A stretch of 64,000 bases of DNA from positions 12,028,001-12,092,000 of the forward strand of contig OZ281500.1 of the NCBI GenBank assembly GCA_965637545.1, in the 5' to 3' direction. Shown here piece after piece: positions 49,606-64,000 of this stretch. The notes below the pieces were generated by a model. That model had not been told where the DNA came from. It did no database searches and saw only the letters and a program-made list of their open reading frames with translations. The DNA is from Phallusia mammillata. Taxonomy: Eukaryota. A program made the position numbers and the translations under genes. Numbering within the stretch: position 1 is the stretch's first letter; each line of letters opens with the position of its first letter.

Positions 49606-50049
49606 ATGAAGTACTGTATACTAATAACATTGCTGCTGGTGGCCGCGGTCAACGCTGCTATTGAATACAAAGACTGTGGATCGCAGGTTGGGAAGATTAA
49701 AAGCATCCAGATATCAAAATGCAATGCTAGCCCCTGCCAACTGCAAAAAAGCAGCAACTACTCTGTCAACATCACTTTTGAAATAATGGAACCCACCGAC
49801 TCAGTCAAGGCCGAAGTGATTGGTGTTTTAGATGGCGTATCAGTGCCCTTTCCTCTGGCGAATAGCGATGGCTGCAAGAACAGCGGCCTCAAGTGTCCTT
49901 TGCAAAAGGGAATGACGTACAGCTATGTATCTACTCTTAGTGTATTAAAGAGTTACCCAAATGTAAAGGTGATTGTGGAATGGAAACTCTTGGATACGGG
50001 CGGAAAAGTAATAGTTTGCTTTGCAACACCAGTGGAAATTGTCGGATAA
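49606..50049 (+). CDS. NPC2: NPC2 / MD-2-related lipid-recognition (ML) protein, 147 aa, single coding exon
   Basis: Signal peptide MKYCILITLLLVAAVNA, then YKDCGS, SPCQL, GVSVPFP..DGCKNSGLKCPL, YPNVKVIVEWKL, VCF, with six mature Cys in the NPC2 pattern. A splice acceptor TTGCAG lies 5 nt before the ATG. Confidence 0.93.
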   Translation: MKYCILITLLLVAAVNAAIEYKDCGSQVGKIKSIQISKCNASPCQLQKSSNYSVNITFEIMEPTDSVKAEVIGVLDGVSVPFPLANSDGCKNSGLKCPLQKGMTYSYVSTLSVLKSYPNVKVIVEWKLLDTGGKVIVCFATPVEIVG

Positions 50050-50445
50050 TTTTTTTTCAATTTAACACCAATAATTTGTAATTTACTGTGACTTTATGTG
50101 AGTACAAAACGTGAATCTACGAATGCAATACAATTGTTAAAAAGTAAAAAATTCGTTTATGCAATAAAATTCTTGAAAAAAAGGCCGAAATGCAGTGGTG
50201 TATTTGCATTGGCCATCAGAGTCTTCGTGCAAAATTAAACATTAGCTTACCAAAAGGGCAACCTATCGAATGGTGTAAATACAGTGGTTCGAAGACAATG
50301 TTTACAAAAGGTTTGAAGGTTAACCAAGTTAACAAGGAGTTACACGAATGTTACTTTATGTGAAAAAAATGTTATGTCGGTAACACATCACTTTGCAGTT
50401 TATGCAATATTTGAATCATGTCATATATTTTTGTGACGGTCTAAA

Positions 50446-53400
50446 CTAATCATATAAATTGCTTTGTGCACGAGACAACATCTTTACTCGAGTTGGAAAG
50501 CCGAGTTTTCTTCGGTAGAAAAGTCGAACATCGGTGTTCATCCAAGTTTCATTGAACAAATCGTAGACTACTTCCAACACAGAAAACACAGAAAATATTA
50601 CCTGGAATAATTACAAAAATCGTAAGCACCTTAAAACATGTTCTGTATTGAGCTGAAAAGCATCAAGTCCTGTCATTTTTCTAACCTGCATTGGGTAATC
50701 AGGGGCAGGGTATGTTGTCACTAAAATGGGAATGGATGAAGCGACAGATAAGGCAATGAACAAAGTAGAAAACCCATGTAGCCAAATCTGCTTCTCGAAT
50801 CTGTTAAAAACAAGGTCAAAGACGTTACTCATATTTATAAAAGTTTAGAACAGTACAAGGTTTAGAAGATGCTTTTGTTAGGCGATGTATTATGTGTCAT
50901 TCACATCATTAGCTACAAGCTAGTTATTTACAATTTAAAGTTAATAATTTAAAATAGGTTTGAACTGTTTTCATATTGGGAATCCAGTAATCAACTGTTT
51001 TCATATTGGGAATCCAGTAATATCGCTCCAATTTTAATGTCGTCTTCCATCAAAAAATACGTTGTAAGAAAGTAAATGTTCTGAAACGAAAGGTTTACCG
51101 TATAGCATCTTTAGGATTGATATAGATCTCCTCTTTGTAGAAAGCCCGACAAGTTGCCACAATCATAACTAGATTAAAAAGCGACACAACAAAATATCCC
51201 AACATTGACACAGATAGGAGCTGGATACCAAAAAGTTGTTCGCAGGTGAGAAGAAACCGGTTACTGAAGTCAAATTCGCCGTCATACAAGACGTAAAGTA
51301 GTGCGACGTTGATGGGGGCCAGTAAAGAATGACCCCAACATACAACGCTGAAGTTTGGACGTTTACTGAAAAAAACAATGCTTATGCCTAGTTAGTTTTT
51401 CCTAAAGTACACACGTACAAGTCCTATAATGCCAATGAACATCAAATCACAGTTTTTGCTATAAAGCAAACTTTGGCCAGATAAGGTCACGGTTTTTAAA
51501 ACACTTGTTGATTCGGTTCTCTTCCACAACAAAAGTACGACTTTTTGAAGGACAAACACGTACCCGTCGTCTTGGGAACTTTTGACCTTTATGTAGATAT
51601 CCAGGAATCGCATGGTAGAGGTTGTCACACAAACTGTGCTGAAGTATGAATAAAGGCAAAGTGTACTCAAGCAGATTATCCCACTTGGTGTCAACTTAAG
51701 GATCAGTAGAATAGTAACAAATCTGCACATGGCTGAAAAACATACGAGACTTTATCATATACGCAAAACAAATATTTTTGTTACATGTGGACACGTTTGG
51801 TTAAAAACAGTTTAATATTATTGTAAAAATATTACAATACTTGTGATGTAGGTCGACATTAAATGCACACAAGATGTTGAACCAAATGAATTTGTAAACC
51901 TATATAGAACACATTAGGTGAGAACGTACCAGCCAAAAGGTTATTTAATGAGATAAAAGTCTTAGCAAATGGAATGTTTTTCGGGTAGAACAGCAGTACG
52001 ATGCAGAGAAACAACATCGCAATGCAAAAGTACACAATCGTGGCTAAAAGCGACCTGAAAAACAAACATGCAGCGTTTGGCACAAATACTCGATTGCATT
52101 ACAATTATTAATGATTAAGTTAGCGACCATGTCATCAGCACGTATTCAAAATGCATGTTCAGCAACATGACAAGTTTCATTATAACTTGTATTGGGAATA
52201 AAAATTACTCAACATTGCCAAAACATACCACATTTCTAAATCCGTTATGTGTTAAAGGTACCTATACAAGGCTTTTACGTTGAACTGATTTACTGACTTG
52301 AATTTCTGTGTTTCATTCTTGGCAATTAAGTCGTCATCGACGTAATCATGACTCAGCAAAGCAAATGTGGTGAGATGATTACATCGGCAAATTATCTTGT
52401 CGTCCCGGATGCGCCAGATCTCGCAACCATCGTCATTGAATATCCCAGCGCTTGATTTTAAATCAATAAACACACACAGGGGATCCTCAAGTTTTCTAGC
52501 AAAGTTAGATAAAAGTTTGTATGTAGTTTAATCACAAACATTACTGCCAAGGTAGTGGTGTATATAGAAAACATCGTTCAGACGTTTCGACAATCTCTGT
52601 TGTCATCATCAGTGCATGTTTTTGCATTAAACTACTTTTCAAGTCCGTGTATAGTGTTCCTGAGTTTGTATGTAGTCTTTTGTAACACGATTTTAAATCA
52701 TACTGTTGTAAAAAAACGTTTTATCGTCATTAGTTTGAATGTAAACGTGAAAAAAGGTTGAAATTAAACACTTGTGTTACTCAACTTACAGACAAGGCTG
52801 TTGTCAATCTATAAAACCCGCGCCTTTTTAAAAGACGAAGTAATAATAGTGTGTGTGTGTACAGTTAGCAGTTTAATGGTTACCTCTTTTGGTAAAACGT
52901 CATGTAGACGTATCCTTTTAGCCGATGTACATTTGTCAATTCGTCATTGACATATAGTTGAGCTCCGACCAAGGCACTGTTTAACTTTCTGCCATTAAAA
53001 CTAAGGTGACCTTCGTTGCCGGTCAAGCTGTTTATTGGCAGAGAACTAAACAATTCGTCGGGATCGTCGTATTTCACCATGGAAACATACATGGTTGTGT
53101 TGACGTCATCATGTGCGGACAGCACGTCAGTGGGTATTTCTATGTAACTTTTGTCAAAACTAAGAAAAAGTTAAACAAAAAATGTCATTAGTCGTTCAAC
53201 CAAAAACCAATCAACCAATATTTTGTAATCATTGACAAAATTTCGCAAAGATTGATGAGAAGTAAGATAGTTATCAAACTACATTAACTTTTTTTTTCTG
53301 AAATAACAAATCTGAAATAGCTATAACCTGAGGTGGGAACTGTCGACATCAGGATATCGCAGTGCATTGTGGGCTTTCTGTACCACCTTCAATGTTAAAT

Positions 53401-56400
53401 GTACTTCTGACGTAAAACTTGTCTGATATACGTCATAGGATTGTGGATTTAGGTTTGACAAACCGTCAGTTGCAGCTTCATCTATGATTGCAAAGTAATC
53501 CTGTGGCCACAAAAATACAGTTACTTCTTTAACAAAAATGTTTTGCCTGGTAATTTCCCCTCGTGTTTGTATTTGTACCTGAATGCCAGTCAGGAGAGAA
53601 GTTACATCAAAGTCGTTCCACAAACGTGCGTATTTGTATTGAAACAAACGTTGTGTAATTGACGTGATTTGGCTGAGATGGTCAAGTTTCTCGTTCCGTA
53701 GAACGTTTTCAAATTGATTGGGTCTCCATGACAACAGTCTGCGCAACATTCCTGCAAAGTTTACACACAAAGTTAGCACTTGAGACAGAAACCGGTACGG
53801 TATTATTTTTTTAATGTGAAGAAAACAAATTGATATTAAAAATAAAAATAATTTTGTTTTAAGGCTAGATATCATTTTACGTCGTCGTATGTTGATATAT
53901 TGTTAACTAAGGTAACAAATGAAATAAAAAAAACATACTCTGAATAATTGCGATGTCGCCGCTCGTCTGAAGAGTTTTTCCATCAGCATCTTCCGACAAC
54001 ATACGGAGAATTCGGTCCGTAACTTCCGTAAATGTTATTTGATTCGGTGATCGCGAACCGATGATCTCCCAAATGTCCTGTCGCAAAACGAATGTTTTTG
54101 CATACATCAATTTGTACAAATCACATACTTAATTTGTGTCACTCTGGTTTCTTGTTTAACGTTTACGCAAGTGTCAGCGTGAATTGGTACAGAAAAATTT
54201 TACATTGCGAAAAAAACACAAAATAAGCTTATAAAACCTACGCGCAAAGCCGGTAAAACACAGCCTGAGAGATCCTCTTTCATCCACAGCTGATTTTGCG
54301 AACATTTTCTCCACACTGTGCCAACGGTGGGAAAAGGACAACTCTGATTCTGTGACCTTCCAGCGTGTTCGACCTCCCACCATAACTTGCTTCGTCCACT
54401 TCGTTCTCTCGGGCAATGTGGCGCCGACCAGGATGCAGAACGATATCTGATAACGAAAATGCGCTTGCGTAAAGAAGTGGTCCTGAGGTGGATCAGATTT
54501 GTAAGACGAGCCGGGTTTTTCGGGTGGGGTTCGGTTTAGGACTTGTATTTTTAACAAACGGACTTGATTCGGGCCTTACTTCACATTCTGTGTCAGTATT
54601 TTTTTAAATATAGATTACCTAGCTAAGTAGCTAGTTGCCGGATATTACCTAATACCCAATCGCTCTAAACGTCTGGCTTTGGCTGTTGCCCGTTATGCAT
54701 GTCTTCTTTAGTATAGGCCTGTCAATCAAACTTTTGGGCCTAAACGGGCTTCCCAAAAATGATTCGGGTTCGGGATTCGGGCTTGCACTTTTTGGTTCAG
54801 GCCTGGTTCGGGTTCGAATTTCAGGCCCGCGAATTTTTCAGGAACTCTGAGGTAGATATCCGAAAACCTTTATGCTGTCAATAGAGATAAAAAAATAGAC
54901 CTACAAAAAGCGTAACTTTCTAGAAAACGGCTTTTGGTGTAGCGATTGTCGATTTATTTGCTTTATGCAAAAAAGTCCACCGTTGCCCTTGAAAACCTAC
55001 CGGTCTGGTGGACAATTTCTTGCTTTGCACAGTTCTTCGACTGATTGTGAATCTTTCCCAGTTCCAGGACATAACAAACCACTTGCACGTGGTGCAGGAT
55101 CATCGCAAAAACGAATTTTATACCGAACTCCTGAACCACAACTGACTGAGCATGGTGACCAGGGCTGCCAAGTACCCCACTTGCCTGTAGAAAATGCAAA
55201 AAATGAAAAGCAACACACGAATGCAACAAATAATAGAGAAACGAACAACAAATAATGAAGAAACTAAGGCTCTCTGCATAATGTTTTAACAATACGCATG
55301 TTTTACAGACTAAAGATAAAAGAGCAGTAGAGTGTGTTGTTCATAGCTGCCAAATTACAGTTTAAGCAACACTTATCAACTTGTACGTTAATGATCATGC
55401 GAATCATGAATCTTTCAATAAAAATTGTGTTTAGAAACGGAAATCACAGTACCATCAAGTGGACAGGGCGTATCCGGACAGTAAACAACTTGCTCCTCGG
55501 ATTCTTCGCAAACAAATTGTTCCCGGAATTCCTGATCTTTCCAAACACACTGGCGAGTTCGAGTTCTAGTACCACGGTTTTCGCCACAAGTGACAGAACA
55601 AGGTGTAAATAAATTCCATTCGCCCCAGTGCCAGTCTGATTTGCACGGAGATAGCCCCAACAATCTTCTCCATTCAGTCTGTTGTTATAGAAAAGAACTA
55701 CTTTGTTTTGAGTTTGGCAAAAATGCGCGAATGCAAATGTGACTAGTTATTAACGGCCGCCCAAAATTTTCCACGGTAATTAGTAATTACTGAGACTCAT
55801 ATTTTTAAACTGAGACTCATATTTGTTACTAACTGTTTTGATATTTTATAATATTCTACCTCTGTACTTTTGTTTTCGCCACACAGTTTGCCCCCGTTGC
55901 TTGGTGCCGGGTTGTTGCACAATCTTATTCTGCTCGAGTTCCTCGCACCGCAAGGAATCACAGCTGGAATCCAGGACATCCAGTTTGACCACTGACCATC
56001 AATTGGACACTGCTCAGTGCAACATTAGTTTAGGATCTAATATACAAATACTATGTCTTAACCAAATTATTGGCAAATCGGTTTGATAACCACCAAAGCA
56101 AATGTACGCGCTCCACTTATGCCACATAAATATTTTTTCGCGAGTTACTATAATGTAGATTGAATTACTTTTTTGTATCTCAAAGTCCACACTTTGCACA
56201 ACCAACCATCCTACTACAATAACCCGGTGCAATTAATGAGGTCTGCTTACTTCTCGTTCATTACATACAACTTCTTCATGTGACAATCCCGGGCAAGTCG
56301 GTATTTCGCTTGTGTCATTTTGAACATTTTCGCAACGCCTTGTTCTGACCAGTGTTCCATTTCCGCATGATTTACTACAGGCGTATGGCGTCATCCAGGA

Positions 56401-59400
56401 AGACCAGGATCCCATGAGCGGACAGGGTACGTTTGGACATGATCTGACGTCAATCTGTCGTGGGAATATAAAAAAAATAGTGAAAACAAGTAATTTACTT
56501 TGAGTTTGAAACAAATGGAAACACTTCAAGTTCCGTTTGCTAGGAAAGATTTAAATATGTTTATGGAAACGGACAAATCTCCGTACAATCAAACACTCTG
56601 GGACAAAACCGAATATCCATATAAAACGTTGTCTATATAGTATTTGGATAAAAAAACAGGTTTACGATAGAAAACCGAAAGAGTGTGGTTTTAGTAATCT
56701 GGGATTCTTAACTCCCAGCAAGACTATAAAACCCACTTACGTCAAATGTTTTGTTTTCTGCACAAGGAAATCCTCCCTCTGACGGAGTGGGACTGTTGCA
56801 GCTTCTGTTCCTCGTAATAACTTCACTGTAACCACAGGTCGCACCACACTGGAAATGAAAAATAATCTTTAACATATCCTATTTAGTATGCAGTGTACAA
56901 ACTGACCTGTGTAAAATCACTCCATTGGGACCAGCCGCCGTGTATAGGACATGCTGAAAGGTTTGAACAAATGACTGTTTCGTCCTCCAAAGACTTTCCG
57001 TCGCATTGGTTAGGGACCAACAATCCCGACGGATCCTCACAGATACGTCTACGTACCATCGTTGAGTTACCACATGACGTTGCACACTAAACACAAGAAT
57101 TTGATCGTACATATAAATGCGGTTAACCGCTTAACCAATTGGTAAAGTTTTTTATGCGATTAACTGGATTTTCCGATAATCCGGAAGCTGTAGTGCAGTT
57201 GTTAACACGGCGCTTATCTGCACTTCCCTTTTAGCTAAAGTGTAGGTATTATTGCGCTGATTTTTGGCAATACATATTCCTTTCTCTCTTTTTTGTAGCC
57301 TTGAACACACAAACAAAACCGCTCAATCAGGACAGCAGATCAACGCTCACACCACAGCGCACAATGAGCCGGCACATATCTTAATCACGTTCGTTTCAAG
57401 AAGGATCAGCAACGCGCACACACTCCACGACATGGCATACACGTCGCGCAAACATTTAAATCACCATTTTTAAAGTCATGACAACGTCTCGTCACATTTT
57501 GGGCGAAAATGCGACTTTAACATAGAAATCATTATTTCAGGTTCTCACACTTCATTCAGTTGTATTTTGTGCGCAATATTGGTACGGAATTACAGTTTTA
57601 CGTGACAAGTGTTTTTTGATGAAGGAAATTATAGAACTTGCGAATAAGTTAGTTTGAACATATAGGTTATATCCATTATATCAGTGGTTCTCAAACTTTT
57701 TTTGTTGCGACGCGTCTGGAAAAGTTTTGTGGACTTGCGACGCACCAGCAAATAAAAGTTAATGAGAAAACTTATTATTAAAGCTGTGTTTATTGATACA
57801 ACAACAAATAACCACGAAACGGAACTATTCTGCGACGCCCTTGGAAAATTGAAACGACGCACCAGGGCGTCGCGACGCACAGTTTGAGAACTACTGCATT
57901 ATATCCATTCAATATGTTGAAATTCAATGGTTTGGTGTCAAATGATGATTTGCATTTTGTTGTTCTATTTAATTGTAACTAAAAGCTTATATAGGTTTAA
58001 CATTTAACAATTTTTTTATCAATACACACAGGTTGGTAGGTTGTCCACTTCGACCACTCATAGATTGATTCCGATCCGAAATTTCTTGTCCAGGCGTTTT
58101 TCCAAATTTCGGGACTTTCTTCTGCACCACGAATTGAAAAAACTTTGACGTAATACAGGCGACCCGCTTCCAAACTAGCGATATTTATAGAAGGTTGTAA
58201 AATAAACCTCTCCTTAACTGGAGGAAGGTCTCGTCTCGTGAAAACCGACACCTGGAAAAACATTAGCTTTTAATAATGCTATAGTAAATAATCAAATAAA
58301 ACTAAATTAAACAAATTGGCTTAGTATAATAATATTTAAAGGATTAACCAGAATTAAAAATTACAATTATTGCTCATTTGCTTACAAAAACCCGAATGAT
58401 TTGATAAGTTAGCGTTTTTCAAGGATACAATTTAAGAACGGGACGAACAAACATATGAGCCGTTTTTACCAGCAAGACAAGCAATTAGTAAAGTATTACC
58501 TTATATCTGTCAACCAGCTCTGCCGGATCAGACGCAGACCATGAGATTTCCAGATTTTGTTCTGCACCAGTAATCGTCAAATCCTTTACTCCAGTCAACA
58601 CTGAAGGGACAGTGAATTGGGAAACAACTTCTGAAGCGACCACATCCGGCTGTGAAGTGTGATAAACACGAAGCAAGGCCTGGTACACACAACCTGAAGA
58701 TAAATTGGTATTTCATCGTCTCTCTGGTCTGTGCTCAGTTCAAAACTATTCAAAAGTTTTCCACATTAACGTGTTTTTGTCATGTGTGTAACTGATATGT
58801 AGATTCGATGTTTTAGTGGTGACGAGGTGGCGAATTTCTGTCCCCATAGGACAGTGGTTCTTAACCGGTGGGAAATTTAACGTATTTAGAGGGGAATCAT
58901 GTAAGTCAGGAGTAACCAAACTCGGTCATGTGGATCGAATCCGGCTTTGAATTAAACGTTGAAAGGTAATTTACTGCATTTTTTTTCGTAACAACATAGA
59001 TTAATTTCACCTAGTTTTACCAGACGGATAAAAATCCAAAGGCCGTTTGTTACATCACAGACATGTCTGAAAGTATTAATGACTTTGCTATTGTTCGCTA
59101 ATAAATGCCTGTCTATGTTGATTGTGATGCAATATTTGAGTTTTGCAAGCAGAGAAGATTCTTCAATATTCCACATTATTTTACTCTCTCACTGAAGCAC
59201 TATTCAAACTAAATAGGATTGCAGTAAGCCTTTAAGGTCCCAACCAAGCCGCTTTACAAAATAGTTTCAATCATTTAATAATTTTTTTGTTAATGTAGGG
59301 CACAAAATTCATCATAAAAATAACAGAGTGGGAAATTCGAACTTGGTGATTCACTTTAGTGCAGTGGTTCTTAACCTTTTTTCCTTGCTGCACCCCTTTC

Positions 59401-62400
59401 AAATCAGTAACCAATTTTCGCACCCCCTTTCAAATCACTAACCAATTTTCGCTCCCCCTTCTGTAATTGCTTAAATAGAATAGACCTAACCAACCTTAAT
59501 GATTCAGCATCCCCGCACCCCCTAGGAACAGTTCTCGCACCCCTTGGGAACCCCTGCTTTAGTGGGAAAACATCCCAAAAAGGTTAAGAAACACTGCCAT
59601 AGGACGTGGTCGCGGACTGCGCGTTACAAACGAGCGATTTAATTGCTTTAAAATTGAAAAAAAAAATTAATCGTTCAAGATTAACTCGACAATTATAGTT
59701 TATGTAGCCTATGCCACAGTTATCCCCAAGTTTGCTATTTGTTCACGACAACAAGAAACATTTACATTTTCGCAATACTAAGACTTCACAACCAAGCAGA
59801 ACAAATATGGGCAGGGCCCAACGATTTAAGCATACCTTTGTAATATAAAACTTTAAAGCAATGCTTATAGGAATGCTGGCTAAAGTACGATTGCTAAAAT
59901 AAAAATTTCCGATTTTAATTTATAGACATAAAGTGCCGCGAACGGGCTGCACCCCTGTCCTCCCTCTGATTTTTTTAAGGAAAAAAATCTGGGAATAGGT
60001 TTAAAAATCCCAGGATTTCCTAGGGTAAGCTACCAAGCCGCATCGCCTTTGCTTCTTGCAACCGTGTCTGTTAAATAAACGAAGCATTTTCACTTTGGGG
60101 TGATTTTCTGATTCGTGCCAACTGATTTTTCAGTCCAATACAATGGTTTACATCAAAAGCGATTTTCGTTTACCTGTTGCAGAAACAGTTAAATTAACAC
60201 TTTTCCATTTCATATACTGCCGAGTGTGCCGGTCGCAGTAAATTGTTGCTAATATCGGTTCACTGCGGGAAGCTTCGGTGCAACCAGCAATGTCGTAAGA
60301 TCCTTCAATTGATGTTAAAACTTCCACAAACATCTGATACATGTAACATTGATTGTCCACTTCCCACTCGACAAAAATAGTTGTGGTGCCAATTCTAAAC
60401 AGGAATCGTATAACGTAAGCTGTGTTACTGAAATCAACACATACTAAACCTAAGCTTTTAGTAAACTTAAATCAGTCTGTGTTTTTCGTTATGCGATGTA
60501 ATATGAATTATATCGATTTCGCCGCTTTAATGGCATCCTCATTTCTTATTCAAATAGAGTTGAGTAAATATTATCCGCAACTGGGATCGTTTGTAATCAG
60601 CGCGTGACGATTTCGGGCCGAAGCACATATCACATTCTTTTATTTCAAGATACTAATTATATAACTTTTCACCGTTTTATATTTAGTTGCAAGCCTTTTG
60701 CTAATCCCGTTTTGACGAGGACTGAGTTGGATGTTGCAATTTTGTCGCCCGCTACTGCAGCTATACGGAACCAGTAAAATGTTTTTGGACGTAGCTCGAT
60801 AAAGTTGTACTTTCGTTGATGTGAATCCACTATGTGGTACTCAGTTGATCCAGAATTTGAAACTGCACGTGAACAAAAATATTAGTTAATTTAGCTTCTG
60901 CACAAATTTTAGAAAGTAATATGAGAGTCAGATTGCAGAAGAATACAACACATAATTAATAGTTTTGGTAGTCAAATCCAACATCAATTTTATGGCAAGG
61001 GCCTCACCTGAAGCTGATATATTGTAGAAGTCGACGAATTCGTCACCTTCAATTGTCCAACTCATCAGAAGGGCAGTTTTTTCCTTCGACTGTGTTGTGA
61101 GATTATTAAAAGAAGTTATGTTGGCTGTGTATGGCTGCGTTCTTCCATACAAAGGAATTGCTGGACCCAGGGCGCTATGAAATTCAGTTGTGATATCGAC
61201 GCGATATCGCTGGCCCGGTAGCAGCACCAAAGTTTCTGCTTCTGTAGATAAATAGAATTGGTAAATTTGTGTTTAACTCGGAGAAACATTCTCTTAAGAC
61301 CACAATTACCAATATCAAAACATTTTAAGGAGCAACATGTGTTAACGTCTGTTGAAAATGTACTGTAAACTGAAAATAAATCCCCAATATATTTTTTAGC
61401 AATAAATCGTCCAATGCCATACCTATATAATAGGCGCGATGCATATCGGAACTTATTGACGTTTGGTTTAAAAATAGGTCATCCCCGTCCTCATCAACGG
61501 CGGACACTGCTATTTTGTAGTGCTCCACCCCGCCGCGTAGTGGCGGATCCCATGCAATGACGTCCATTCCGGGCAGCAAAATGTCATCGAGCGGCACTTC
61601 AGATCTTTCAAAAAAAAAACAGTTTTTAACATTAAAACTGCGAAACAAAAAATCATAGACTTTTGATCGCTCACCTGACATTTATGGCCGCATCTGGTGG
61701 GATTATTACAATGCTGCTTTCCTGCGCGGTAATTAATTTAGGCAGATGACTGGCAGAAGGTTCGGCAAAAACAATCACAGTGTACGAGGTACCAGGTTCA
61801 GCGTCATGTATCAACAATAAAATATCTTCAGGATTTTGAACTGGTGTAAGTGTGCGGCTTAAAAGGGCCTGGTTCTGATTCGATCTAAAATACAAGTGAC
61901 AAAATAAACATCGCAATTCTACGAACTTCAAAACAAACAAAGATAAAGGTTGCACAACAATATACAGGTCGTTACGTTTTAACCGACATGGTTGACTACT
62001 AATACGTGTCACATATACCCTTAAAATCAACCACATAACCAGACCAGAAAAAATGCAAAAAAGGAGAACAACTTGAAGACAATGCGAGACTCAAGTGAAC
62101 CAATTACAAATGACTTACCCTGTTTTTCCATAGCCTGCGAGGAAGCTTATAGAACTGACGTCAAACTGCGTGAAAGCAAAGTAGTCATAGGACAATGTGA
62201 CATTAGTTGTGATAATTCCACCTCTGTATTCCGAATTTACTTGCAAGGTAACAGAAAGTCGATCCATAGTGGTAAGACACGAATTCACGTCTTGCAATTT
62301 CCTTAAGTTACCGATGCCGTTCGCACTAACAGAGCTTGATAATAAATTAAGTGGAGGTTCATTGTTGTGAAAACAGGAGAACTGCAAATCTGTTATTTCC

Positions 62401-64000
62401 AACGTTGTAAGAGTCGAGTTGGTGGCATAAATGTCACTTATCATGCCAACTAGTTGCTTGCCGAAAACCCCAACATAATTGTCAACTGTAACTGCTTTCA
62501 GTCGAGCGACCACGTTGGTTCCGTTATTGTACTGAATTTGTGGTAACAGAGCATCGCTCGAACCTATGATCACGTGACCAGAAAAATTGTTATTCAATGT
62601 ACACGGCAATTGTCCACTTGTCTCAGCAACATCTTTGGCATCCACTAGCACTTTACACAACGAGTTTGCATCATTCTCTGATCCTGTAACCACACACAGG
62701 TAGTGCCAGTGACCATCAAGAAGAACACTGGAATCAAAAGGAACCACACTTCCGTCTGGTGCAACAAACACGCTGACGTTTACGGTGTTAGTTTCTGTGA
62801 TGGCCAAAACTGGAACCATACCGTCTTCAGCCATCCACAACAAAGTACCGATCTGAGTTGTCTTTAGCCACATGCAAATGTTATTGAACCGGTTGTTGGT
62901 GATGGAAATATATGATCTGGTGTCTGTGACAGGAAATTCAACAGCTCCAGTACTCATAATCCCATTTACACCTGATTGGTAGGCGAAGAGTGGACGAGTA
63001 TCAAGGCACACGGCTGATGTTAAAGCGTTCTCGGATCCTGGACTCACAAAGCAATTTTTCCACGAGCTGATAGCAGCACCGTAATCCGATCTATGAAATA
63101 ATATAGGTGGAAAGGGGCTAACTTATGAACTTGAGCAATAGCAAAATTATGAGATAATGTTGAAGACATTCGTGTTTAAACTACTAAATTGCTGACCCCA
63201 CATTTTAACGTTACAATGACTTTCCTTATCACACAGAACGGATCTTATGTTTTTTTTCGCAGAAAAAGATTGTTACTTTTCAAGAAACCTTTTTTTTTTA
63301 TCTAACTTAATCCTAAAAATCAAACATTGCAATTTAAATAACCTTTCAAACCAACCTACCGAACGGTGTCGCTTGATGGATCGACAGCAAAACAACCAAC
63401 CAATGAGAGCAGTGGTGGACATGTGATGTAATTTACCTCATTGTTAAATGTGATGATGGTTCTGGTGAAGATGTCTTGGGTAGTTTCGCGACAAAACAAT
63501 TTCCCTAAAGACACAGTATTTAGAATTAGTTTTTTCAACAGTAATGGACACGTTTTGTAATTTTAGACAGTTTACGTACCAATAAAGTTATTCCGTTTTA
63601 TAGAAAATATAATTGAAGCACACATGTAGTTTCAACATGCAACTTGTATTGGCTACGTTTGAATTTTGTTTCCGCGGTTGAATATCAATTTATATATCAA
63701 TTACAAAAACTAAATTATGGACGAAATATGTCGATTTAAGTTCACGTAAAGAAAACTTAAGGTTGTTCTTCACATATGAAGATACTAGCTTTATGAAGTA
63801 GCAAAAGTTTGAAGGTGGAAACACATCTATTTTACCTAAAGACACTATTACCTGATTTACTGTTTGTTTTTCCATATGCACACACAAGCATTTAACCATG
63901 GCAAGTTATTCGAAACAACTAACCTTTTGTTGCCACGGCATACTGGTTTAAATCATGGCGAAATCGGATCACGCAAGAGTTTTGCTCCGGGAAATCCAGA
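50446..64000 (-). CDS. Large adhesion GPCR: pentraxin/LamG - about 5 FN3 - 6 TSP1 - HormR - GAIN/GPS - 7TM (5' end beyond window)
   Basis: 27 phase-consistent exons: >64000-63924, 63504-63360, 63090-62119, 61884-61675, 61604-61423, 61241-61008, 60862-60673, 60394-60174, 58693-58500, 58251-58030, 57086-56907, 56848-56741, 56454-56251, 56009-55860, 55678-55453, 55184-55001, 54446-54242, 54077-53939, 53751-53579, 53500-53328, 53159-52884, 52495-52262, 52054-51930, 51732-51564, 51365-51099, 50800-50686, 50601-50446 (about 5.7 kb, about 1,900 aa). GPS reads CVF...DDGC...CRCNHLTTFALL. HormR reads CPRE...LWW...SCP...GTVWRKC...WMKEDLSGC. Seven hydrophobic segments end VIFSVFSVLEVVYDLF...DVRLFYRRKL. 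Confidence 0.9.
50963..51021. repeat. Perfect 30-bp tandem duplication in an aGPCR intron
   Basis: AACTGTTTTCATATTGGGAATCCAGTAAT occurs twice, period 30. Confidence 0.9.
54494..54849. mobile_element. hAT-type MITE with GGGTTCGG/TTCGGGC subterminal repeats
   Basis: TSD aggtggat / aggtagat (7/8). Ends CAGA.../...TCTG. Located in the intron between the TSP1-6 and HormR exons. Confidence 0.7.
57682..57896. mobile_element. Short hAT MITE, internally deleted relative of 29746-30522
   Basis: Same termini and GCGACGC repeats as 29746-30522. Perfect TSD cattatat (57674-57681, 57897-57904). Confidence 0.92.
58852..59596. mobile_element. hAT MITE (inverted sister of 47338-47877) containing a nested MITE
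   Basis: Perfect TSD ccatagga. The left end CAGTGGTTCTTAACCGGTGGGAAATTTAA is the reverse complement of the right end of 47338-47877. Confidence 0.9.
59362..59556. mobile_element. Nested 195-bp hAT MITE
   Basis: Ends CAGTGGTTCTTAACC / TTGGGAACCCCTG. Perfect TSD ctttagtg. GCACCCC repeats and an internal 30-bp tandem duplication. Confidence 0.88.

What the first reader, a model, noticed from the sequence alone, without database searches (positions are those of the whole stretch)
50446..64000. Mosaic adhesion GPCR combining pentraxin/LamG, FN3 and BAI-like TSP1-HormR-GAIN modules
Seen: in order, a 972-nt exon with a pentraxin/LamG-like fold (VEFP...SYI, ICMWLKT, DGHWHYLC, IIG, GMISDI..., LTTLEI..L..C), about five FN3-like repeats (W..P...Y.I, L.PG..Y.V), six TSP1 repeats (W..W..CS.SCG...R.R.C), HormR, GAIN with HL/T, 7TM and a tail of only about 20 aa. 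Established: TSP1+HormR+GAIN defines ADGRB/BAI (4-5 TSP1, long tails), pentraxin occurs in ADGRG6/ADGRD-type receptors, and FN3 is not part of the standard vertebrate aGPCR ectodomains. Inference: a domain-shuffled receptor with an architecture I do not recognise, possibly an innate-immune or matrix sensor. Further N-terminal domains lie outside the window.
Basis: partly seen in the sequence, partly recalled or inferred. Interest (0 to 1): 0.8.

Follow-up and report, generated by a model that had tools for sequence, protein, structure and literature searches.

The report
Sea-squirt mosaic adhesion GPCR gene
This is a real, transcribed, many-exon sea-squirt gene for a large adhesion-type receptor with an unusual string of outer domains (pentraxin/LamG-like, five FN3, six TSP1, HormR, GAIN) ahead of a very divergent seven-helix membrane part; the same outer-domain order is found in other sea squirts, so it is a lineage-specific variant of a known receptor class, not a new kind of system.

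Summary
On the minus strand, 27 GT-AG exons with matching phases (64000 to 50446) give one open frame of 1909 aa ending at a TAG. In order they encode:
- a Cys-rich linker;
- a 972-nt exon whose predicted structure matches pentraxin/LamG jelly rolls;
- about five FN3 repeats;
- six TSP1 repeats;
- HormR;
- GAIN/GPS with the HL|T cleavage site and a TTFALL tethered-agonist motif;
- seven hydrophobic helices and a tail of about 30 aa.

One exon carries both the end of the last FN3 and the WSKW start of the first TSP1, so no gene break lies there. Spliced contigs from public runs confirm nine predicted junctions, from TSP1-3 to the GPS exon and one inside the 7TM.

The model aligns in the same domain order with an uncharacterized Styela clava protein (E 4e-174). 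That protein adds C-type lectins and a kringle upstream. Two further tunicate-like contigs share parts of the order.

"BAI-like" is architectural only. The tail is short, the orthologue's HormR-GAIN matches latrophilin and CELSR better than BAI3, and the 7TM exons match no 7tm_2 model or solved receptor. Its function as an immune or matrix sensor is untested. I rate it a new variant of a known kind, of moderate interest. The scan has noted other adhesion GPCR genes in this genome.

The parts
63924..64000 (-). Exon Y, partial (runs off the window): Cys-rich linker region lying between kringle and LamG-like domain in the orthologue
   Evidence: Open frame and a strong GT donor after 63924; its phase fits exon Z. 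The similarity of this exon to Styela P0002 was read by eye; the BLAST alignment starts at its last two residues.
63360..63504 (-). Exon Z: Cys-rich linker
   Evidence: tblastn hit to P0002 935-991; AG/GT flanks and phases fit exons Y and A.
62119..63090 (-). Exon A, 972 nt: pentraxin/LamG-like jelly-roll domain plus the start of the first Ig/FN3-like module
   Evidence: Invariant W74, G81, D125, W128, H129 shared with Laminin_G_3-type homologues. Best structural match NP1 pentraxin domain, Z 16.1, rmsd 2.9 A over 187 residues.
61675..61884 (-). Exon B: FN3-like repeat 1 (end)
   Evidence: GT-AG, phase match; same order as P0002.
61423..61604 (-). Exon C: FN3 repeat 2 (start)
   Evidence: homologous exon in contigs L001/L004.
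61008..61241 (-). Exon D: FN3 repeat 2 (end) and repeat 3 (start)
60673..60862 (-). Exon E: FN3 repeat 3 (end)
   Evidence: Pfam fn3 E 0.002.
60174..60394 (-). Exon F: FN3 repeat 4 (start)
58500..58693 (-). Exon G: FN3 repeat 4 (end) and repeat 5 (start)
58030..58251 (-). Exon H: FN3 repeat 5 (end) plus the WSKW start of TSP1-1, in one exon
   Evidence: The orthologue's best fn3 hit maps to model residues 705-784.
56907..57086 (-). Exon I: TSP1-1 (rest) and the WSQW start of TSP1-2
   Evidence: Pfam TSP_1.
56741..56848 (-). Exon J: TSP1-2
   Evidence: Pfam TSP_1 E 1e-4.
56251..56454 (-). Exon K: TSP1-3
   Evidence: Pfam TSP_1 3e-5. The K/L junction is seen as a loose end at 56009 whose letters are the end of exon K.
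55860..56009 (-). Exon L: TSP1-4 (lacks the CSxxCG motif, as does the Styela orthologue)
   Evidence: Pfam TSP_1; L/M junction in runs X1 and X2.
55453..55678 (-). Exon M: TSP1-5
   Evidence: Pfam TSP_1 1e-6. The M/N junction is not covered by contigs.
55001..55184 (-). Exon N: TSP1-6
   Evidence: Pfam TSP_1 6e-11; N/O junction in X1.
54242..54446 (-). Exon O: HormR (HRM)
   Evidence: Pfam HRM E 0.003, below cut-off. The orthologue's HRM passes the cut-off. O/P junction in X1 and X2.
53939..54077 (-). Exon P: GAIN subdomain A (start)
   Evidence: P/Q junction in X1, X3, X4; aligned to P0002.
53579..53751 (-). Exon Q1: GAIN subdomain A
   Evidence: The 78-nt in-frame intron 53578-53501 is spliced out in X1 and X4.
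53328..53500 (-). Exon Q2: GAIN
   Evidence: Q2/R junction in X1 and X4.
52884..53159 (-). Exon R: GAIN subdomain B
   Evidence: R/S junction in X2.
52262..52495 (-). Exon S: GPS motif with HL|T, the TTFALLSHD tethered-agonist motif, and the stalk
   Evidence: Pfam GPS 9e-10; PDB GPS regions of ADGRD1, F1, G6, G3, E5, L3, B2.
51930..52054 (-). Exon T: TM1 and the start of TM2
   Evidence: Hydropathy; phase-matched GT-AG; no RNA junction seen.
51564..51732 (-). Exon U: TM2-TM3
   Evidence: Hydropathy; U/V junction in X2.
51099..51365 (-). Exon V: TM4, ECL2, TM5
   Evidence: Hydropathy; U/V junction.
50686..50800 (-). Exon W: TM6
   Evidence: Hydropathy and phase-matched GT-AG only.
50446..50601 (-). 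Exon X: TM7, a tail of about 30 aa, and the TAG stop at 50448-50446
   Evidence: no RNA coverage.

Best explanation
Its ectodomain order is conserved among tunicates. Upstream of the window the orthologues carry C-type lectins and a kringle. Inside the window come a Cys-rich linker, a pentraxin/LamG-like jelly roll, about five FN3, six TSP1, HormR and GAIN/GPS.

Likely mechanism (inferred from the family, not shown here): the GAIN domain cuts itself at HL|T. The large sugar- and matrix-binding N-terminal fragment stays attached non-covalently. Ligand binding or mechanical pull exposes the TTFALL tethered agonist to the seven-helix domain. The short tail and the very divergent 7TM suggest reduced or altered intracellular signalling compared with BAI. 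By ancestry it is most likely a tunicate-specific adhesion-GPCR lineage built by exon shuffling, not a plain ADGRB orthologue.
For: Shown here:
- 27 exons, all GT-AG with matching phases, give one 1909-aa frame that is open to the TAG.
- Exon H holds both the FN3 end and the TSP1 start.
- Nine predicted junctions (K/L, L/M, N/O, O/P, P/Q1, Q1/Q2, Q2/R, R/S, U/V) are reproduced exactly by spliced contigs from four runs of one study, and no conflicting splice junction appears.
- Pfam finds TSP_1 six times, GPS at 9e-10, and weak HRM and fn3.
- The fold of exon A matches pentraxins at Z 15-16, including the ADGRG4 PTX-like domain at Z 14.5.
- Hydrophobic segments lie only at model residues 1554-1805.
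- There is a one-HSP alignment in the same domain order to Styela clava XP_039262711, residues 948-2415, E 4e-174. It includes the odd TSP1-4 that lacks CSxxCG.
- Contig L002 follows the Styela order from lectins through kringle, LamG-like domain and FN3. L001 and L004 carry the LamG-like exon plus FN3 exons.

Inferred: self-cleavage, tethered-agonist activation and G-protein coupling, from established knowledge of GAIN-containing adhesion GPCRs.
Against: - No 7tm_2 hit, PDB hit or database homologue exists for any single 7TM exon. The spliced 7TM could not be submitted because it has no reference.
- The junctions M/N, S/T, T/U, V/W and W/X, and everything upstream of 56249, have no transcript evidence. 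The GPS-to-7TM link and the short tail therefore rest on frame and splice-site logic alone.
- Both Styela RefSeq isoforms end inside GAIN without GPS or 7TM.
- The runs are only guessed to be RNA, and depth is low (3-5).
- The N-terminus and signal peptide are outside the window.
Confidence: 0.72

Rival explanations
1. There are two products. One is a secreted lectin/kringle/LamG/FN3/TSP1/HormR protein that ends inside GAIN, as the Styela RefSeq models do. The other is a separate, or only alternatively joined, GPS-7TM unit.
For: Styela isoforms X1 and X2 both stop within GAIN with a short non-homologous tail. The S/T and T/U junctions are not covered by contigs.
Against: In this window, contigs join P-Q1-Q2-R in one 666-nt record and R-S in another, so GAIN runs on into the GPS exon. 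Exon S continues in frame, with no stop before its donor, into the TM1 exon. A GAIN domain without its GPS strand would not fold according to established GAIN structures. The Styela ending looks like a truncated model or a retained intron.
Confidence: 0.1
2. It is one gene, but the seven-helix part has degenerated into a mere membrane anchor. The protein would then act as an adhesion or scavenger molecule without G-protein signalling.
For: No sequence match of any 7TM exon to 7tm_2 or to solved receptors. By eye, the usual TM6 Trp and the TM7 QG pair of class B (recalled from knowledge, not tested) are replaced. The tail is about 30 aa.
Against: Seven segments with class-B-like spacing are kept open across five exons. 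HL|T and the TTFALL motif are intact. Tunicate proteins in general evolve fast, and Ciona adhesion GPCRs are reported to lack clear homology to the human ones (PMC2396169).
Confidence: 0.2
3. It is the tunicate orthologue of vertebrate ADGRB/BAI, which gained extra N-terminal modules.
For: The order TSP1 repeats, HormR, GAIN, 7TM is the ADGRB hallmark. A 7TM phylogeny reports at least one ADGRB-family member in Ciona (PMC8584163).
Against: The orthologue's HormR-GAIN matches latrophilin-1 (2e-4) and CELSR1 (5.5e-4) better than BAI3 (0.017). The tail is short and lacks the long BAI C-terminus. The 7TM is too divergent to hit anything. An earlier Ciona survey found no BAI orthologue (PMC2396169). 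Ciona and lancelet have radiated, unassigned families ADGRN and ADGRX (PMC8584163).
Confidence: 0.2

Closest known systems
Styela clava LOC120338817 (XP_039262710/711, 'uncharacterized protein')
   Same: Alignment in the same domain order over about 1470 residues (28% identity, E 4e-174): Cys-rich linker, LamG-like domain, FN3 repeats, six TSP1 (including the aberrant fourth), HormR and GAIN-A.
   Different: The Styela model adds about five C-type lectins and a kringle at the N-terminus; the matching part of this gene lies outside the window. It stops inside GAIN with no GPS or 7TM. It has never been described as an adhesion GPCR.
Vertebrate ADGRB1-3 (BAI1-3)
   Same: TSP1 repeats followed by HormR, GAIN/GPS and 7TM.
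   Different: - BAI has 4-5 TSP1 repeats, no LamG/pentraxin-like domain, FN3, lectin or kringle, and a long cytoplasmic tail.
- Here the tail is about 30 aa.
- The orthologue's HormR-GAIN is closer to latrophilin and CELSR.
- The 7TM shows no detectable similarity.
Pentraxin-like domains of ADGRG4, ADGRG6 and ADGRD1
   Same: A jelly-roll domain in an adhesion-GPCR ectodomain. The human ADGRG4 PTX-like domain matches the model at Z 14.5, rmsd 2.9 A, over 176 residues.
   Different: At the sequence level the domain is nearer to Laminin_G_3 (PF13385) proteins, including bacterial repeats. There was no Pfam match of any kind to the exon at E up to 0.1, so no Pentaxin match. The rest of the architecture differs.
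Amphioxus and Ciona lineage-specific adhesion-GPCR radiations (kringle, somatomedin B and C-type-lectin receptors; ADGRN/ADGRX)
   Same: Invertebrate-chordate adhesion GPCRs with shuffled ectodomains and 7TMs that cannot be assigned to vertebrate families (PMC2246102, PMC8584163, PMC2396169).
   Different: None of those papers, as far as I read them, describes the combination lectin-kringle-LamG-FN3-TSP1-HormR-GAIN. Membership in ADGRN or ADGRX was not testable here.

Membership tests
Adhesion GPCR (class B2) | GPS motif at the end of a GAIN domain, directly before TM1 | tested here: met
   Pfam GPS E 9e-10 on exon S. PDB GPS regions of seven aGPCR subfamilies match. About 300 aa lie between HormR and GPS. 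The orthologue's HormR-GAIN matches 4dlq, 8vy2 and 4dlo.
Adhesion GPCR (class B2) | Autoproteolysis triad H-L-T/S and a hydrophobic tethered agonist (TxFAxL) | tested here: met
   CRCNHL|TTFALLSHD is read directly in exon S. Cleavage itself was not tested.
Adhesion GPCR (class B2) | Seven transmembrane helices | tested here: met
   Kyte-Doolittle scan: six strong hydrophobic segments plus a weaker seventh at model residues 1554-1805, and none elsewhere.
Adhesion GPCR (class B2) | 7TM homologous to Pfam 7tm_2 / solved class-B receptors | tested here: inconclusive
   Single 7TM exons give no 7tm_2 hit, no PDB hit and no database homologue. The spliced 7TM has no reference, so it was not submitted.
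ADGRB / BAI subfamily | TSP1 repeats N-terminal to HormR-GAIN | tested here: met
   Six TSP_1 repeats, then HRM, then GPS, in one frame.
ADGRB / BAI subfamily | 7TM clusters with ADGRB in phylogeny | not testable with these tools
   No reference aGPCR 7TM sequences could be obtained, and the spliced query cannot be referenced.
ADGRB / BAI subfamily | Long cytoplasmic tail with BAI-type signalling motifs | tested here: not met
   About 29-35 residues follow TM7, then the TAG at 50446. A convergent ML-domain gene ends 400 bp away. That the BAI tail is long rests on established knowledge.
ADGRB / BAI subfamily | HormR-GAIN most similar to BAI | tested here: not met
   Styela orthologue piece: latrophilin-1 2e-4, CELSR1 5.5e-4, ADGRL3 1.4e-3, BAI3 0.017.
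Pentraxin / LamG (concanavalin-A-like jelly roll) | Jelly-roll fold | tested here: met
   AF2 model with core pLDDT 62-83. Pentraxins Z 15-16, PAPP-A LamG-like domain Z 15.3, LG domains Z 12-13.
Pentraxin / LamG (concanavalin-A-like jelly roll) | Sequence-family match (Pfam Pentaxin or Laminin_G_3) | tested here: inconclusive
   The window exon has no Pfam hit at E up to 0.1. Its homologues hit Laminin_G_3, P0003 above the cut-off. phmmer links it to bacterial LamG_3 repeats at 4e-13 to 7e-6.
FN3 | Pfam fn3 match | tested here: inconclusive
   Each FN3 is split between two exons. One exon gives E 0.002, below the cut-off. The orthologue, aligned in the same order, gives fn3 at 2.8e-20 in three stretches.

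The most novel reading that the evidence does not exclude
A tunicate-specific adhesion-GPCR family. Its ectodomain would be a pattern-recognition array (C-type lectins, kringle, pentraxin-like jelly roll, FN3 stalk, six TSP1) tied through GAIN to a strongly remodelled seven-helix domain with almost no tail. It would act as a chordate innate-immune or apoptotic-cell sensor that works differently from BAI1 and has no vertebrate counterpart.
Probability: 0.2. Interest if true: 0.55.

Novelty: new variant of a known kind. Interest (0 to 1): 0.36.

Why it matters
The finding gives a checked gene model, partly supported by transcripts, for a roughly 2500-aa class of tunicate receptor that public annotation lists only as a truncated 'uncharacterized protein'. 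It shows that the Styela model probably lacks its GPS-7TM end.

It is a clean example of exon shuffling. FN3 and TSP1 modules are split across symmetric-phase exons on an adhesion-GPCR chassis in the sister group of vertebrates.

It also warns against calling a receptor 'BAI-like' from domain order alone. The very divergent 7TM next to an intact HL|T and Stachel motif makes this a useful test case for whether tethered-agonist signalling survives extreme 7TM divergence.

Tried and rejected
- **Pfam on the stop-to-stop pieces that hold the exons:** nothing for exon A or for any 7TM exon.
- **PDB sequence searches:** exons U, V and R gave nothing relevant. Exon O (HormR) gave only CELSR1 at E 0.13.
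- **The search for homologous proteins:**
  - Styela region 1081-2442 returned only TSP1-rich proteins.
  - Styela region 2200-2442 returned only itself.
  - Exon V found no candidate.
- **Spliced protein:** As a result Pfam, structure prediction and phylogeny of the joined 7TM were left out. The spliced model was used only inside scripts.
- **Rejected idea, gene break between FN3 and TSP1:** one exon spans the boundary.
- **Rejected idea, exon Q as a single exon:** contigs remove a 78-nt in-frame intron.
- **Reads:** Read laying was used once, on 6000 bases (50250-56249). The LamG-FN3-TSP1 half therefore has no transcript check.


Full report
**What is there.** The window has no N runs. I read the sequence base by base and derived 25 exons from 63090 to 50446. 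I later added two upstream exons (64000-63924, partial, and 63504-63360).

All 26 introns are GT-AG and every phase matches. The joined frame is open for 1909 residues up to the TAG at 50448-50446.

**Domains.**
- **TSP1, GPS, HRM, fn3.** Pfam on the stop-to-stop pieces that hold single exons finds TSP_1 in six successive exon groups, GPS (E 9e-10), a weak HRM (E 0.003) and one weak fn3 (E 0.002). The FN3 modules score poorly because each is split across two exons: every exon holds the end of one repeat and the start of the next.
- **FN3/TSP1 boundary.** Exon H (58251-58030) holds the end of the last FN3 and the WSKW start of the first TSP1.
- **GPS exon.** It reads CRCNHL|TTFALLSHD, which is an intact cleavage triad and a Stachel-like motif. 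It matches the GPS regions of solved ADGRD1, F1, G6, G3, E5, L3 and B2.

**The 972-nt exon.**
- It has no Pfam hit.
- A full HMMER scan of 1.84 billion representative proteins finds only nine relatives. These are four short ORFs from metagenome or Logan contigs, one 2442-aa Styela clava protein, three bacterial proteins made of LamG-type repeats, and one weak match (E 1e-6) to a short stretch of an 861-aa repeat protein that I did not examine.
- The short homologues hit Pfam Laminin_G_3.
- An AlphaFold model built from their alignment (A1) is of moderate quality: mean pLDDT 58.6, core 62-83.
- Foldseek and VIA-align put pentraxin domains first: NP1 at Z 16.1, rmsd 2.9 A, 187 residues; CRP, SAP and PTX3 at Z 15-16. 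Next come the PAPP-A LamG-like domain (15.3), the human ADGRG4 PTX-like domain (14.5) and classical LG domains (12-13).
- 'Pentraxin/LamG-like fold' is therefore right. At the sequence level the domain is a Laminin_G_3-type jelly roll.

**Seven-helix part.**
- Hydropathy shows six strong hydrophobic segments plus a weaker seventh, only at model residues 1554-1805. They follow the stalk and are spread over exons T to X.
- By eye, class-B-like landmarks are present: a TM3 Cys and an ECL2 Cys, a WG in TM4, an Asn in TM5, and an N-E pair after TM7. That comparison is from memory and is a lead, not a test.
- Objectively, no single 7TM exon matches 7tm_2, any solved structure or any database protein.
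- The spliced 7TM has no reference, so I did not submit it. This is the main gap in the work.
- The tail after TM7 is 29-35 residues. A convergent ML-domain gene ends 400 bp further on, so a longer tail is unlikely.

**Transcripts.**
- Four runs of one study hold 6-15% of the sampled words.
- I laid them on 50250-56249. Their contigs show nine joints with CT..AC ends on the plus strand, which equals GT..AG on the minus strand, and they fall exactly at my predicted introns. The joints are L/M, N/O, O/P, P/Q1, the 78-nt in-frame intron Q1/Q2, Q2/R, R/S and U/V. A loose end at 56009 also carries letters that are the end of exon K.
- One 666-nt record spans P-Q1-Q2-R.
- No contig contradicts the model. 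The other joints in that table, and the high-depth pieces, lie on intronic repeats at 52527-52661 and 54568-54711.
- Depth is low (3-5).
- The junctions M/N, S/T, T/U, V/W and W/X are not covered.

**Relatives.**
- The model aligns in one HSP with Styela clava XP_039262711 ('uncharacterized protein LOC120338817') over residues 948-2415, at 28% identity and E 4e-174.
- The correspondence holds domain by domain, down to the aberrant fourth TSP1 and the HormR core.
- In Styela, Pfam finds about five Lectin_C domains, a kringle, fn3 (2.8e-20), TSP_1 and HRM above the cut-off.
- Both Styela isoforms end inside GAIN with a short unrelated tail. Given the Phallusia contigs that run from GAIN into the GPS exon, I read that ending as a truncated model or a retained intron.
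- A 12-kb Logan contig (L002) follows Styela residues 31-1852 in the same order: lectins, kringle, linker, LamG-like domain, FN3.
- Metagenome contigs L001 and L004-L007 carry a LamG-like exon about 30% identical to the window's; FN3 exons downstream of it were confirmed on L001 and L004.
- The ectodomain order is thus conserved in at least three or four tunicate-like genomes. The domains lying beyond this window are predicted to be a kringle and C-type lectins.

**Comparison with known families.**
- It is an adhesion GPCR by its GAIN/GPS, its Stachel motif and its seven helices.
- It resembles ADGRB/BAI only in the order TSP1-HormR-GAIN-7TM.
- The orthologue's HormR-GAIN matches latrophilin-1 (2e-4), CELSR1 (5.5e-4) and ADGRL3 better than BAI3 (0.017).
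- The BAI-type long tail is absent, and the 7TM cannot be placed.
- Literature context:
  - An early Ciona survey found 30 adhesion GPCRs, mostly with models holding only a GPS domain, and no BAI orthologue (PMC2396169).
  - A later 7TM phylogeny reports members of families A, B, C, D, G and L in Ciona, plus two radiated unassigned families, ADGRN and ADGRX (PMC8584163).
  - Amphioxus adhesion GPCRs carry kringle and C-type lectin domains (PMC2246102).
  - FN3, kringle, TSP1, LamG and HRM are all listed among adhesion-GPCR ectodomains (PMC12716839, PMC4302439).
- I found no paper that describes this particular combination.

**Verdict.** The BAI affinity and the immune-sensor idea are not established. 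Domain-shuffled adhesion GPCRs in invertebrate chordates are well known, and an orthologue is already in RefSeq. I therefore rate this a new variant of a known kind, of moderate interest. The points worth following are the extreme 7TM divergence next to an intact cleavage and agonist motif, and the conserved lectin-kringle-pentraxin-FN3-TSP1 array. Earlier notes of this scan report other adhesion GPCR genes in the same genome; I did not test them.

Noticed in passing
window 49606-50049 (+): A single-exon gene for a small secreted ML-domain (NPC2/Der p 2-like) protein, Pfam E1_DerP2_DerF2 E 1.4e-28. It is convergent with the receptor gene; the two stop codons lie about 400 bp apart.
   Followed up: partly
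window 52527-52661 (intron between exons R and S): Short stretch covered at depth 50-260 by contigs carrying several mismatches and an opposite-strand joint, against depth 3-5 on the exons. It is probably a transcribed repeat or inverted-repeat element inside the intron.
   Followed up: no
window 54568-54711 (intron between exons N and O): Pieces of 3.9-kb contigs at depth about 60 touch only 40 bases here and then run on into unlike sequence. A TA..TA joint also skips 100 bases. This looks like a dispersed repeat copy, not part of the gene.
   Followed up: no
window 53501-53578: A 78-nt intron that is in frame and free of stops. If retained it would insert 26 residues into GAIN subdomain A. 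It is spliced out in both runs that cover it.
   Followed up: partly
P0002/P0023 (Styela clava XP_039262711/710) C-terminus; P0022: Both RefSeq isoforms end inside GAIN with a short unrelated tail. A newer Styela record (XP_077972506, 741 aa) holds only the N-terminal lectin part. The public models of this gene therefore seem to be fragmented.
   Followed up: partly
window 63360-64000 (-); P0002 860-1090: The roughly 200-aa Cys-rich region between the kringle and the LamG-like domain has no Pfam match, yet it is conserved between Styela and this window. It may be an undescribed module.
   Followed up: partly
window 58694-60173 (intron between exons F and G): A 1.5-kb intron with several open pieces that look like repeat-derived sequence. 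One example is two near-identical 40-nt units around 59400-59480.
   Followed up: no
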